64,000 nucleotides of DNA from Iphione sp. A-MEVVRFRX5 (taxonomy: Eukaryota): assembly GCA_976226885.1 (NCBI GenBank), contig OZ320314.1:61132001-61196000 (forward strand), written 5' to 3'. Shown here piece by piece: positions 894 through 40,619 of the stretch. Position numbers and translations under genes: made by a program. The notes below the pieces were generated by a model, which was not told where the DNA came from, ran no database searches, and saw nothing but the letters and a program-made list of their open reading frames with translations. Within the stretch, counting starts at the first letter, position 1; every line of letters starts with the position of its first letter.

Positions 894-957
894 ATGCGTC
901 AAATGGGGACCAATCATATTGTATTATAATATGAGTATTGGTCCCCATTTGACGCAT
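894..957. repeat. 64-bp hairpin / inverted repeat with 21-bp perfect arms
   Basis: atgcgtcaaatggggaccaat (894-914) is the exact reverse complement of attggtccccatttgacgcat (937-957); inner catatt/aatatg extends the stem. Confidence 0.9.
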
Positions 958-1776: not shown

Positions 1777-1848
1777 TTAGCACCACTATGAGTCGCTGCG
1801 TGGCGACGAAGGGAGATGATGATGCTGCCACCTGGGGTATACCAGTGA
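1777..1848 (+). repeat. DIRS left inverted terminal repeat
   Basis: 1808-1848 is the exact reverse complement of 6635-6675 (41 bp); 1777-1817 is the exact reverse complement of ICR 6404-6444 (41 bp). Confidence 0.95.
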
Positions 1849-2080
1849 AAATAGCTGTTTCCGCTCGGGGTAGCCGTGCCGTTTCACGCTCCGCAGTCTG
1901 CGTGCGTTTTTCCTCGGATTCCTTTGGATTTTCGTCGCTTTGTCTTCGCATCTTTCTTCGTTTTTACTTGCTGAGCAAGCCGGTGGTTTCTGGACCTATA
2001 ACCAGTTGGGCAGTGTGACTCGCGAACACTTTTTTCTCTCTTCCACGTGGCGGGCCTGACGGCGGCCATTTTTTGTCACC

Positions 2081-3232
2081 ATGTCCAGACGTGGGAAGCA
2101 GGATAAAGACAAGCCCGAGTCGGCTCCAGAGGACATCGGGAACGCCCCGGTTCCTACCAGTACACCCAGCACGATTAATACATCCGAAAATGTATTTACT
2201 CAACTCCTCACGGCGATTATCGACATGCCGAAAGCTCTGAATGACAGACTCTCACACATGGAGGACCGGTTGAGCGCCAAGATGGCGCCCACCCCCTCTA
2301 CTAGCGGACGCTCGTCCACCACGGGTCCGTCTGACGACTACTCTATCTCTGAGATTGGAGACTCTCGTTCGTCTATCGCTACAGAAGAAAACCTCGTCAG
2401 AAGGGGAGAACACGACCTCTCAGAAGGGGAGGTAGACGAAGACTCTGGTACCTCCAGCTACTACGATGGCCTTGTTACCGGCCTAGAGGAAGACGCATCC
2501 ATAGGGAAAGATGCGCACGCCCGTGTTGCTCGTTACACAGGGGGCAGGATCAAGAAACCACTGGAGGGGGAAGCCGCCAAGAATTTACGCCTCAAATACC
2601 CGCGTCCTGCGAACATTCCAGAGATGCAGCCACCTAAACTCAACGGTGCCCTCTGGCATCACATGCATCCTTTTGGACGGAACCGCGACAAGGCGCTTCA
2701 ACGAGTAATGCACCTCATAGTCCCGTCTCTCACAGCAGTCATACGACTCACGGAAGTCTTAGTTGCTCACGAAAAGGACACAGAGTGGGTGCAAGAGGCC
2801 CTGCGGATCACCTCGGACATCATCTCCCTCGAGGTGGGTCTTCGCGAGGAGATATTGAAGTTCCGCCGCGCGGAAGTCAAAAATGATCTCAGCCCCATCT
2901 TCAAACGGTTAGTTGAAGAAGCCCCTGCCTCACAACATTGGTTGTTTGGGGATGAACTCAGACAGCATTGCAAAGACTTGGAGGACGATGAACGCCTTGC
3001 CAAACGAATGGATAAAGGGAAATCGGGCCCCAAACACTTGGCAAAAAACCGCCACGAGCCTTATCGGAAGCCGGACAACAAGTCCAACAGAGGGAAGCCG
3101 AACAGGAAGTTCGGTCGCTCAGACTACCGGTCGTCAACTACATACCGCAGCCCCTTGGAGAACGTCGAACAGCCAAAAAACGGGGCAGCGGGGCCCAACA
3201 AGACCGGGCCCCAGAAAACACAAGCCAAGTAA
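2081..3232 (+). CDS. gag: DIRS ORF1 (gag-like), 383 aa, intact
   Basis: Uninterrupted ORF with good start context (tcaccATG), first ORF after the left ITR; acidic/Ser-rich N-terminus, central KLNGALW...RDKALQ...RRAEVK...WLFGDEL block resembling DIRS ORF1 proteins, basic C-terminus. Confidence 0.88.
   Translation: MSRRGKQDKDKPESAPEDIGNAPVPTSTPSTINTSENVFTQLLTAIIDMPKALNDRLSHMEDRLSAKMAPTPSTSGRSSTTGPSDDYSISEIGDSRSSIATEENLVRRGEHDLSEGEVDEDSGTSSYYDGLVTGLEEDASIGKDAHARVARYTGGRIKKPLEGEAAKNLRLKYPRPANIPEMQPPKLNGALWHHMHPFGRNRDKALQRVMHLIVPSLTAVIRLTEVLVAHEKDTEWVQEALRITSDIISLEVGLREEILKFRRAEVKNDLSPIFKRLVEEAPASQHWLFGDELRQHCKDLEDDERLAKRMDKGKSGPKHLAKNRHEPYRKPDNKSNRGKPNRKFGRSDYRSSTTYRSPLENVEQPKNGAAGPNKTGPQKTQAK
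3175..3212 (+). promoter_or_regulatory. Putative -1 programmed ribosomal frameshift signal (gag to pol)
   Basis: A AAA AAC heptamer in the gag frame (3175-3181), 8-nt spacer, then ggggccc (3190-3196) / gggcccc (3206-3212) stem with a 9-nt loop; the -1 frame is the pol frame and is open from 3016. Confidence 0.6.
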
Positions 3233-3237
3233 ATGAG

Positions 3238-5118
3238 GTGAGTACCCCCTTTAAGGCGGGTAAAATCCCTTCTTGCTTCAATGAATGGTCTTTGATCACA
3301 TCTAACGAAGTAATCTTAGAAATGGTCCGCGGGGTCTCCATTCAGTTCAGGTCTTTACCGCGCCAAACCTTCACCCCTCGACCTTATGTTTTTCCACCAC
3401 CTCAAAGACTGGCCATCGTAGACATTATTGATGAATTACTTCAAGTAGGTTCCATTGTGACTACCACCCGGGAGGACCTCTTGTGGGTATCGAACATCTT
3501 CCTCCGACCCAAGTCCGATGGCTCATTCCGTATGATTCTGGATCTTTCCCCTCTCAATGAGTATGTGGTCTACGAACATTTTAAGATGGAAAACTTCGAA
3601 ACTATCCTCCCCTTGATTCATCGAGGGGCCTGGCTGGCTTCGATAGATCTAAAAAACGCTTACCACGCCATAGCTGTCCACCCTCATTCCCAACGCTATC
3701 TCGGATTCCAATGGGAGGATGCTTTTTACAAGTTCACCGTCCTCCCGTTCGGCCTCTCCTCCGCCCCACGCATTTTCACAAAATTGCTTAAACCCGCTCT
3801 CTCTTACCTCCGTGAGCGGGGGGTGTGTCTAGCAGCCTACATTGATGATCTGCTTATTGTAGGGTCGGATGAGCGAGAGTGCCGTCGTGCTGTACGTCTC
3901 ACGTTGGATCAGATGCAGGGCCTGGGTTATTCGGTCAATGACACTAAGTCTAGCCTTCGGCCTGCAACAGTTATCAACTACCTCGGGTACGTGATCGATG
4001 CTAAAAATAATGTCATTACCCCTACTCTGGAGAAGATAACTAAAGTTCAAAATGCTATTTCCACCTTGTGGCACAACCCACGCCCCACCATTAGGCAAGT
4101 GGCCGCGGTCATAGGCAGTCTGGGGGACCTCACCAAGGCTGCCTCCTATGGATGGTTACACCTCAAAGCTTTAGAAAGGGCTAAGATAGGGGCTCTACGT
4201 AAGGCGGGACCCCTACAGTACAACGCATACATGACCCTCACTGAAGAAGCTTGTTGGGACCTACGGTGGTGGTATGAGCACATACACGCCATTTCCAGGA
4301 AAATCCACCCAGACACGCCCCACATTCACATGTACACTGACGCATCCCTTTTGGGATGGGGAGCCGTTTACAGGGAGGAACGGACAGGAGGCCTCTGGTC
4401 CTGACAGGAGAAAACTTTCCATATCAACACCCTAGAGCTTCAAGCCATTCTCCTAGGGCTTCAGTCATTACTTTCCTGGGTCCGGGGAGAACCGATCCTC
4501 ATTTTTTCTGACAACACGACCGCAGTGGCCCACATTAACTGTCAAGGGGGGACCCGGTCCATCAACTCCGCTCAGGTGGCCTACCATATAGGCTGTTGGG
4601 CGGAGGGGAGAGACATCACCTTGTCTGCCACGCACATTCCTGGGTCTCTCAATGTGGAGGCGGACACCCTCTCCCGAGACATCAACACCAACACGGAGTG
4701 GGAGTTGAATGATGATATTTTCAACCATATTGTACAGTTTTGGGGACTACCCTCAGTCGATCTTTTTGCGTCTAGGATTAATCACAAGGTTAAAACTTAT
4801 GTGAGCTGGCGCCCTGACCCTGATGCCCTGTTTGTTGACGCTTTCCTATTGGACTGGGCACAGTTTGATCATGGCTATGCCTTTCCACCTTTCAGCCTCG
4901 TGGGACGTGTGGTACGCAAGGCGATCTCAGACGGAGCCAAGGTGGTCATCGTGGCCCCCACCTGGCCGGGGCAGTGGTGGTATCCACTGGTGCGCCAAAT
5001 GTCGTCGACTCCGCCTCTCATCATACCGCCCAGCGCCGGCAATCTCCTCGCCCCACACGCCCAGCCAACAGCGGACAACGTCGCCAACACAGGGCTGACT
5101 GTAGTTCGCTCATGGTAG
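3238..5118 (+). pseudogene. pol: DIRS pol: reverse transcriptase - RNase H - Dam-like methyltransferase, one in-frame TGA at 4402-4404
   Basis: RT motifs FRMILDLSPLN, IDLKNAY, LPFGLSSAPRIFTK, YIDD; RNase H motifs YTDASLLGWG, HINTLEL, FSDNTTAV, HIPGSLNVEADTLSR. ORFs 3238-4404 and 4525-5118 share a frame, and translation across the stop reads ...GGLWS*QEKTFHINTLEL... Confidence 0.93.
4699..5001 (+). other. DNA N6-adenine methyltransferase-like (MT) domain at the C-terminus of pol
   Basis: WELNDDIF...VDLFAS (4759-4773)...DPDALFVDAF...DW...YAFPPF (4876-4893)...VIVAPTWPGQWWYP, the motif string typical of the DIRS MT domain. Confidence 0.88.
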
Positions 5119-6053
5119 CGGCCATTGACGGGATGTCCAATGACCCCACTGTGCGAAAACACATCCTCCACTCCTGGCGCCCCAAGACCAGACGGGTCTA
5201 CAGGACTTACCTCAATAAGTGGCAGTTATTCTGTATCCGGTCAGGTATTGATCAATCCAACCCTACGCTGATCCAGGGTCACCGCTTCCTGTGTCACCTT
5301 TATGAACAAGGGTTACGGTACAATGTACTTAACGTTGCTCGCTCAGCTTTATCTGCGGTCCTACCGCCTTTTAAGAGTATGTTTGGGGTACATTCTTTTG
5401 GATCTCACCCGGTAACCATTAGATTACTCAGGGGTATGTTTAACATTAGACCTCCCAGGGCTCGCTATGTCCACACCTGGGACATCGAGCTGGTTCTCAA
5501 TCTGTTCAGAGAACACACAAGTAACGCCTACCTCTCCCTTAAGATGTTAACGTTCAAAACGGTTATGTTATTGCTTCTGGCGTCATGCGGGCGCTCTCAG
5601 ACCGTTTACAAGATCAAACGGGACAATGTGCACCTCACGTCCAAAGGAACAGTCGTCATCACGTTTGACTCTGTATTGAAGCATTCCCGACCTGGACGTC
5701 GGGCGGACAAGATCATCCTCGATCCCCTGCCAGACGATCGCGCAGTGTGCCCCGTTAGGGCCCTCAAGGAGTATCTGCGCCGAACCAGGGATCTCGCCCA
5801 ACCAGGAGACAGACTGTTCCTGTGTCTCCTGCCTCCCCACCAGTCTGCGGCCCAGAATACGATCGTTCGGTGGGTATGACAGGTTATGCAAATGGCGGGA
5901 GTGGACACTTCCATGTTTACGGTGCATAGCACGAGGGGGGCTGCTGCCTCCAAGATGTTCCACGCTGGCGTCCCCATCAATGTCATTCTTGAAAAAGGAA
6001 TGTGGTCCTCGGAGTCCAGCTTCAAGCGCCATTACTGCCGCCCAGTGGCTTAG
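5112..6053 (+). pseudogene. DIRS tyrosine recombinase, one in-frame TGA at 5877-5879
   Basis: ATG at 5112 overlaps the pol stop; LLLASCGRS (R), KHSRPG (K); past the TGA the same frame gives QVMQMAGVDTSMFTVHSTRGAAAS...GMWSSESSFKRHYCRPVA* with HxxR, W and catalytic Y, ending at TAG 6051-6053. Confidence 0.92.
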
Positions 6054-6403
6054 TTCGGTTGTGTTGACTGTTATTGTGAACTGTTGCGTTAACACTCATA
6101 TCGAGGGACTTCTTGCCTGCAGTTGTGGGGCCGTCTGCCCCTCACCTGTACCCTTGGTGCTTATCTCTTTGCCATACTTACCCCCTCGGGGACATGATTA
6201 GGCCTAAAGCAGGGCCTCAGATCGAACTTTTCTTGTTCGTTTTTGGTTCGAGGAGGGAAGTTCCTCCGCTGGTTCACCTGTCACCAGGTTTATTGAGGTT
6301 GAAACTATGTTTTTCAGCAATAAATTTCCTTCTTCTCAGGAAATTTCTCGTTCGTGTTTTTTCCTCTAGCACAACTACTCGACCCCCAATAGGCTTCTTT
6401 GAA

Positions 6404-6528
6404 ATCTCCCTTCGTCGCCACGCAGCGACTCATAGTGGTGCTAATTACTCGGTTTGGTTAAACTTACCTGGTAAGTTGACAGCAAACCCTGGTTAGCACC
6501 ACTTGAGGAGAGTAGTGGGGAGGAAGGG
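6404..6528 (+). repeat. DIRS internal complementary region (ICR)
   Basis: 6404-6444 = reverse complement of 1777-1817; 6442-6528 = reverse complement of 6670-6756 (87 bp). The halves overlap at TAA. No mismatches seen. Confidence 0.95.
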
Positions 6529-6634
6529 CCCACCCTCCCTCCCTCAAAATCGCCTACAGGGTCATTTTGCTTCTTTTTGCTGCTTGGCGGACCTCTTGGG
6601 GGTCTCCCTCGCTGCAATCTCATCTATTTTGGCA

Positions 6635-6756
6635 TCACTGGTATACCCCAGGTGGCAGCATCATCATCTCCCTTCCTCCCCACTACTCTCCTCAAGTGGT
6701 GCTAACCAGGGTTTGCTGTCAACTTACCAGGTAAGTTTAACCAAACCGAGTAATTA
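6635..6756 (+). repeat. DIRS right ITR plus ~51-nt right extension
   Basis: 41-bp perfect inverse of the left ITR core, a diverged segment ending ctcaagtggtgctaa (6691-6705, inverse of the left tip), then an extension to TTA 6754-6756. Confidence 0.93.
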
Positions 6757-40485: not shown

Positions 40486-40619
40486 NNNNNNNNNNNNNNN
40501 NNNNNNNNNNNNNNNNNNNNNNNNNNNNNNNNNNNNNNNNNNNNNNNNNNNNNNNNNNNNNNNNNNNNNNNNNNNNNNNNNNNNNNNNNNNNNNNNNNNN
40601 NNNNNNNNNNNNNNNNNNN
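40486..40619. other. Assembly gap (134 N)
   Basis: Run of N. Confidence 1.

What the first reader, a model, noticed from the sequence alone, without database searches (positions are those of the whole stretch)
4399..5883. Two single in-frame TGA codons in identical TGA-CAG-G context while the termini are mutation-free
Seen: pol reads tcc TGA cag gag (4402) and the recombinase reads gta TGA cag gtt (5877). These are the only lesions found in the three ORFs, and all catalytic motifs downstream are intact. The three terminal/ICR pairings (41+41+87 bp, including CpG-rich stretches) show no mismatch. Established: UGA-C is the leakiest stop context, CGA>TGA is the typical methyl-CpG decay, and DIRS ends are re-templated from the ICR each cycle. 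Inference, three options: (a) programmed read-through throttling RNase H-MT and catalytically complete YR; (b) a defective sub-lineage with inherited stops, mobilised in trans while still supplying Gag; (c) two independent CpG hits after a recent insertion, the most conservative reading.
Basis: partly seen in the sequence, partly recalled or inferred. Interest (0 to 1): 0.72.

Follow-up and report, generated by a model that had tools for sequence, protein, structure and literature searches.

The report
Two private stop mutations in DIRS copy
A DIRS-type jumping gene in this animal genome carries two stop codons inside its enzyme genes. Both are private mutations of this one copy at mutation-prone CpG sites, so this is ordinary decay of a fairly young insertion and not a programmed way of making protein.

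Summary
Window 1777-6755 is a complete DIRS1-like retrotransposon (gag, RT-RNase H-methyltransferase, tyrosine recombinase, ITRs and ICR). It has one in-frame TGA in pol (4402) and one in the recombinase (5877). Both are followed by CAGG, there is no other stop or frameshift, and the terminal/ICR pairings are perfect.

The stops are private to this copy:
- Whole-genome pattern scans found only six copies of this subfamily; the five others read a sense codon at both sites.
- So do 24 more distant DIRS copies, several of which have fully open pol and recombinase frames.
- Polarised by an 81% outgroup, both stops are derived CpG-type transitions. They are 2 of 11 such changes on this copy's branch, and four others also change amino acids.

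Both stops lie inside domains: within RNase H, and within the recombinase fold ahead of its HxxR and Tyr. Neither sits at a module boundary, neither matches a known read-through motif beyond +4 C, and the downstream RNA is unstructured.

The clean termini carry little weight (318 nt, 10 CpGs; about one change expected).

An inherited, trans-mobilised defect cannot be strictly excluded, because this sublineage has a single copy.

The parts
1777..1848 (+). Left inverted terminal repeat. Its first 41 nt are complementary to the left ICR arm.
   Evidence: 1777-1817 with 6404-6444 is 41/41; 1808-1848 with 6635-6675 is 41/41; the whole ITR is about 87.5% over 72 nt against 6635-6705.
2081..3232 (+). 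gag-like ORF1, 383 aa, open.
   Evidence: No Pfam hit. On this copy's branch 11 of 12 changes are synonymous.
3238..5118 (+). pol frame: RT, RNase H and a Dam-like methyltransferase, interrupted once.
   Evidence: RVT_1 at 2.2e-22; RVT_3 and Dam matches just under their cut-offs. Colinear with an open relative.
4402..4404 (+). In-frame TGA in pol. It lies inside the RNase H domain, after the TDAS aspartate and before the LE glutamate.
   Evidence: Private to this copy and derived.
4974..6053 (+). Tyrosine recombinase frame (first ATG at 5112), overlapping the end of pol, interrupted once.
   Evidence: The relative's ORF matches Phage_integrase at 32 bits against a cut-off of 27.1.
5877..5879 (+). 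In-frame TGA in the recombinase. It lies after the box I arginine and 17 codons before HxxR, with the catalytic Tyr further downstream.
   Evidence: Private to this copy and derived.
6404..6528 (+). Internal complementary region. Its two arms overlap by 3 nt (6442-6444), which is the circle junction.
   Evidence: layout as described for DIRS1-like elements in PMC3266345.
6635..6755 (+). Right inverted terminal repeat plus right extension, complementary to the right ICR arm.
   Evidence: The end is fixed at 6755 by comparison with the sister copies.

Best explanation
Window 1777-6755 is one fairly young insertion of a DIRS1-like tyrosine-recombinase retrotransposon in single-copy DNA. After it landed it began to decay neutrally. 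Two of its CpG-type C-to-T transitions happened to fall on codons that become TGA, one in the RNase H part of pol and one in the catalytic domain of the recombinase. As assembled, the copy can encode only Gag, an RT with a truncated RNase H, and a recombinase lacking its HxxR and Tyr residues. Shown here: the stops are private to this copy, derived, of CpG type, and inside domains. Inferred: they arose after insertion and not in the parent element.
For: (1) Whole-genome pattern scans (up to 3 mismatches) find six copies at each site (site 1 also draws two copies of the 75% family, both sense), and only the window copy has TGA (alignment). (2) All 29 other DIRS copies examined, from 97% down to about 60% identity, read a sense codon at both sites, and several have fully open pol and recombinase frames. 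(3) With L007 (81%) as outgroup, both stops are derived on the window branch. That branch has 53 derived substitutions, 11 of them CpG transitions. (4) In coding DNA the branch has 29 synonymous, 14 non-synonymous and 2 nonsense changes. CpG transitions are 6 of 10 amino-acid-changing, against 10 of 35 for the rest. The sister stem has about 16 synonymous to 1-2 non-synonymous. This fits a thin layer of neutral decay, roughly 0.3-0.45%, on top of changes fixed under selection. (5) The stops fall inside the RNase H match (residues 335-452 of the open relative; the stop maps to about 361) and inside the Phage_integrase match (192-355; the stop maps to 302). (6) No significant RNA structure follows either stop (z = +0.25 and -0.04). 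(7) Stops of the same kind, TGA aligned to an arginine, occur at five other scattered positions in decayed DIRS copies of this genome. (8) Clean termini are expected at this age: 0.8-1.3 changes expected in 318 nt, so P(0) is 0.28-0.44. The sister copies, which are older, show 2-6 mismatches.
Against: This sublineage has only one copy, so 'after insertion' cannot be separated from 'already in the parent'. Two stops among at most 11 CpG transitions is mildly unlikely (binomial P about 0.04, less if fewer are post-insertion). The two codons hit are the only pair among 13 sharing the CAGG context (1 in 78). The excess of amino-acid-changing CpG transitions is only a trend (Fisher P = 0.13). No reads could be examined, so base-call accuracy and allele state are unverified.
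Confidence: 0.8

Rival explanations
1. Inherited defect. The parent of this copy already carried one or both TGAs and was copied using Gag, RT and recombinase supplied in trans by intact relatives.
For: The genome holds related DIRS families with open frames that could supply enzymes. An earlier, unchecked note of this scan (s1-312014) reports a gene-less DIRS-like element mobilised in trans. The sister copies travel inside a satellite-carrying composite unit. The double hit and the shared context are mildly improbable under pure chance.
Against: No second copy with either TGA exists in the 1.18-Gb assembly. The nearest potential helpers are only 75-81% identical, and the other subfamily members are all broken. 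Four other amino-acid-changing CpG hits on the same branch point to ordinary decay.
Confidence: 0.1
2. Programmed or tolerated read-through. UGA-C is leaky, and low-level read-through throttles the output of RNase H-methyltransferase and of full-length recombinase.
For: Both stops are UGA followed by C, the leakiest four-base context (own knowledge; PMC4132726 calls UGA the leakiest stop). They share an identical CAGG context, and the motifs downstream are intact.
Against: The stops are not conserved in any of 29 relatives. They lie inside folded catalytic domains, not at module boundaries. The context matches neither UGA-CUAG, nor CARYYA (only CAG fits), nor UGA-CGG/CUA. There is no downstream structure. 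Related families make these proteins from open frames.
Confidence: 0.03
3. Assembly or base-calling error: the true sequence has sense codons at one or both sites.
For: Reads could not be inspected.
Against: Substitution errors at two chosen sites are very unlikely in a chromosome-scale assembly (89 contigs). Mis-polishing from paralogues would pull the sequence towards the sense state that all paralogues carry, not away from it. The flanks are single-copy.
Confidence: 0.03

Closest known systems
DIRS1-like retrotransposons (order DIRS; overview in PMC3266345)
   Same: Three ORFs (gag; RT-RNase H-methyltransferase; tyrosine recombinase overlapping the end of pol). Inverted terminal repeats. 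Two internal complementary regions overlapping on a 3-nt circle junction. A right extension. No target-site duplication.
   Different: Nothing structural. This copy is a broken member, with two nonsense mutations. Gene order is gag-pol-YR, as in many animal elements.
Nonsense decay of methylated CpG in transposon copies (C-to-T deamination turning a sense codon into TGA)
   Same: Both stops are derived transitions at positions that are CpG in all sister copies. They are accompanied by nine more CpG transitions on the same branch. The surrounding genome is CpG-depleted (observed/expected 0.68, against 0.77 in the element).
   Different: Methylation of this element was not measured. The shared CAGG context has no known role in deamination.
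Programmed stop-codon read-through (retroviral gag-pol UAG with pseudoknot; UGA-CUAG genes such as OPRL1, AQP4, MDH1; CARYYA in plant viruses; PMC4132726)
   Same: UGA followed by C.
   Different: The stops are not conserved, sit inside domains, lack a full motif and have no 3' structure.

Membership tests
DIRS1-like retrotransposon | Reverse transcriptase domain | tested here: met
   RVT_1 at E = 2.2e-22, 80.3 bits against a cut-off of 29.6.
DIRS1-like retrotransposon | RNase H domain after RT | tested here: met
   In the window copy the domain is split by the stop, and the downstream piece scores RVT_3 21.5 against 21.6. In the colinear open relative RT_RNaseH scores 27.6 against 24.8 and RVT_3 23.2 against 21.6. 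Alignment.
DIRS1-like retrotransposon | Methyltransferase (Dam-like) domain after RNase H | tested here: inconclusive
   Dam PF05869 at E = 2.4e-5, but 24.5 bits is below the cut-off of 28.1; the relative gives the same result. Position and order are right, but the score is sub-threshold.
DIRS1-like retrotransposon | Tyrosine recombinase with R...HxxR...Y | tested here: met
   Phage_integrase at 32 bits against 27.1 in the open relative. The window frame is colinear with it and has the GR, HSTR and terminal RHY motifs; the TGA lies between R and HxxR.
DIRS1-like retrotransposon | ITRs plus two ICR arms complementary to the ends and overlapping on a 3-nt junction | tested here: met
   definition from PMC3266345.
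Programmed stop-codon read-through | The stop is conserved among functional relatives | tested here: not met
   None of 29 other copies has a stop at either site.
Programmed stop-codon read-through | Known stimulatory 3' context (CUAG, CARYYA, CGG/CUA) or a 3' structure | tested here: not met
   The contexts are CAG-GAG and CAG-GUU; motif list in PMC4132726; fold z-scores +0.25 and -0.04.
Programmed stop-codon read-through | The stop separates functional modules | tested here: not met
   Both stops lie inside Pfam domain matches of the open relative.
Programmed stop-codon read-through | Measured read-through product | not testable with these tools
   Needs reporters or proteomics.

The most novel reading that the evidence does not exclude
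The two UGA-CAG-G stops were already present in a still-mobile parent element. They were tolerated because that context leaks enough to supply trace RNase H-methyltransferase and full-length recombinase, or because relatives supplied these in trans. On this reading the shared context reflects selection on which nonsense mutations a transposing lineage can survive.
Probability: 0.06. Interest if true: 0.5.

Novelty: already known. Interest (0 to 1): 0.1.

Why it matters
It matters little in itself. It shows that two eye-catching same-context stops in an otherwise clean transposon copy are ordinary CpG decay, and that perfect DIRS termini over about 300 nt say little about age. It also gives a worked way to separate changes fixed under selection before insertion from decay after it, without building a consensus. 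That method uses an outgroup-polarised private-change tally combined with synonymous/non-synonymous counts. The side observation, sister copies riding inside a satellite-carrying unit, may be more interesting than the stops.

Tried and rejected
I had hoped to find independent contigs encoding the two truncated ORFs.
- There was therefore no check of base calls, allele state or expression.
- Downstream RNA structure as a read-through stimulator was rejected.
- Recurrence of stops at the same sites in other families: none found.
- A paralogous empty site for the insertion: none, because the flanks are single-copy.
- The large protein searches were not used, because the family scans left nothing open.
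- A splice-signal reading of CAG|G at the two sites was considered and dropped for lack of any support.

Full report
**What is there.** Window 1777-6755 (+) is a complete DIRS1-like retrotransposon.
- gag occupies 2081-3232.
- The pol frame 3238-5118 matches RVT_1 (E = 2.2e-22), an RNase H-like domain and a Dam-like methyltransferase.
- The tyrosine-recombinase frame 4974-6053 (first ATG at 5112) overlaps the end of pol.
- The left end pairs with 6404-6444 (41/41). The right end pairs with 6442-6528 (87/87). The inner ITRs pair 41/41. The two ICR arms overlap by 3 nt.
- This is the layout described for DIRS1-like elements in PMC3266345.
- The flanks are single-copy in the 1.18-Gb assembly, and the window holds no other DIRS copy.

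**The observation.** Aligned end to end with an uninterrupted relative, the pol and recombinase frames have no other stop and no frameshift.

**Copies.**
- A whole-genome search with the pol-YR segment found five other copies at 96-97.5% identity (L002-L006), one at 81% (L007), and families at about 75% and about 66%.
- In the alignment all five close copies read a sense codon at both sites.
- Pattern scans of the whole genome around each site (up to 3 mismatches) recover only these six copies, plus two of the 75% family at site 1. Only the window copy has TGA.
- A tblastn comparison with X at each break shows a sense residue at both sites in all 29 other loci. Several 75%-family copies have pol and recombinase frames without any stop.

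**How independent the sister copies are.**
- The five close copies are not five insertions. All sit at the same point of a 126-bp-period satellite monomer, each about 688 bp before the 3' end of the array. That end is followed by an inverted satellite piece of about 82 bp.
- L004, L005 and L006 share at least 3 kb of flank on both sides at 99.2-99.9% identity, so they are segmental duplicates.
- L002, L003 and that trio share flank only to about 800-840 bp downstream, which marks a bounded composite unit.
- Within the subfamily the comparison is therefore between two insertion events. The polarity comes from L007 and the more distant families.

**How each copy is broken** (positions are window equivalents).
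- Window copy: the two stops.
- L002: a 15-nt in-frame deletion (3310-3324) and 1-nt deletions at 4122 and 4170.
- L003: the same 15-nt deletion and the 4170 deletion.
- L004-L006: one extra base at 3258, a 4-nt deletion at 5807-5810, and shared stops at pol codons 345 and 390 (the codon just after site 1). L005 and L006 have a further stop at codon 454, and L005 has an extra base at 4545.

**Polarity and spectrum.**
- At 91 columns the window copy differs from all five sisters, which agree with one another. L007 polarises 53 of these as derived on the window branch, 23 on the sister stem, and leaves 15 unresolved.
- Of the 53, 11 are CpG transitions, and both stops are among them.
- In coding DNA the window branch has 29 synonymous, 14 non-synonymous and 2 nonsense changes. 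The sister stem has about 16 synonymous to 1-2 non-synonymous.
- Most window-branch changes were therefore fixed under purifying selection, while the lineage was still active.
- The excess of roughly 12 amino-acid-changing differences implies about 13-17 neutral coding changes since insertion, about 0.3-0.45% (inference).
- CpG transitions are 6 of 10 amino-acid-changing, against 10 of 35 for the other changes. This is a trend only (Fisher P = 0.13).

**The paradox in the title.** The paired terminal parts total 318 nt and hold 10 CpGs. At the estimated age 0.8-1.3 changes are expected there, so P(none) is 0.28-0.44. The older sister copies show 2-6 mismatches in the same pairings. Clean termini together with two stops is unremarkable.

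**Chance.**
- The three ORFs held 13 codons of the type that a CpG transition turns into TGA, among 218 CpGs. At least two such hits among at most 11 CpG transitions has P about 0.04.
- The two codons hit are the only pair of the 13 sharing CAGG (1 of 78 pairs).
- Both figures are post hoc. I keep about 10% for an inherited origin because of them.

**Against programmed read-through.**
- Site 1 maps to residue 361 of the open relative. That is inside its RNase H match (335-452), between the TDAS aspartate and the LE glutamate.
- Site 2 maps to residue 302 of 359. That is inside the Phage_integrase match (192-355), after the box I arginine and before HxxR and the tyrosine.
- Known read-through signals are UGA-CUAG, UAG-CARYYA, UGA-CGG/CUA, or a 3' pseudoknot (PMC4132726). 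Here only the +4 C fits at both sites, and CAG fits the first half of CARYYA.
- The 99 nt after each stop fold no better than shuffles (z = +0.25 and -0.04).
- In-frame stops in other decayed DIRS copies of this genome are scattered. They include five more TGAs aligned to arginine, none of them in a CAGG context.

**Not possible.** Assembly error is unlikely on general grounds, because paralogue-driven mis-polishing would produce the sense state.

**Limits kept.** The stops were read through only as X or as separate pieces.

**Verdict.** This is ordinary CpG nonsense decay of a fairly young DIRS1-like copy (confidence 0.8). The rivals are an inherited, trans-mobilised defect (0.10), read-through (0.03) and assembly error (0.03).

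Noticed in passing
L002-L006 with flanks L036-L045 (G000 C1:66.07 Mb, C15:55.42 Mb, C22:33.04 Mb, C2:18.25 Mb, C22:47.95 Mb): All five sister copies sit at the same point of a 126-bp-period satellite monomer, each about 688 bp from the array's 3' end, which is capped by an inverted satellite piece of about 82 bp. Homology between the C1, C15 and C22 groups stops about 800-840 bp downstream. The satellite has more than 1000 matches genome-wide, in blocks of about 2-7 kb.
   Followed up: partly
L004, L005, L006: These three copies, on two chromosomes, share at least 3 kb of flank on both sides at 99.2-99.9% identity. They are large segmental duplicates, or possibly duplicated assembly, and not separate transpositions.
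   Followed up: partly
L009, L011, L012 and others of the 75% family; L018, L021, L022, L026-L028 and L030 of the ~66% families: Many more distant DIRS copies in this genome show pol matches, and several also recombinase matches, without any stop. DIRS elements therefore look recently active here. This is description only.
   Followed up: partly
L004-L006, window-equivalent 4405-4407: The segmental-duplicate trio carries a shared TAG in the codon immediately after site 1. It is a different lesion from the window copy's TGA and is adjacent by coincidence.
   Followed up: no
window 897-956: A near-perfect hairpin of about 60 nt with 19-nt arms (GCGTCAAATGGGGACCAAT and its complement), about 820 nt upstream of the element. 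Seen only by reading.
   Followed up: no
window 40486-40619: A run of 134 N.
   Followed up: no
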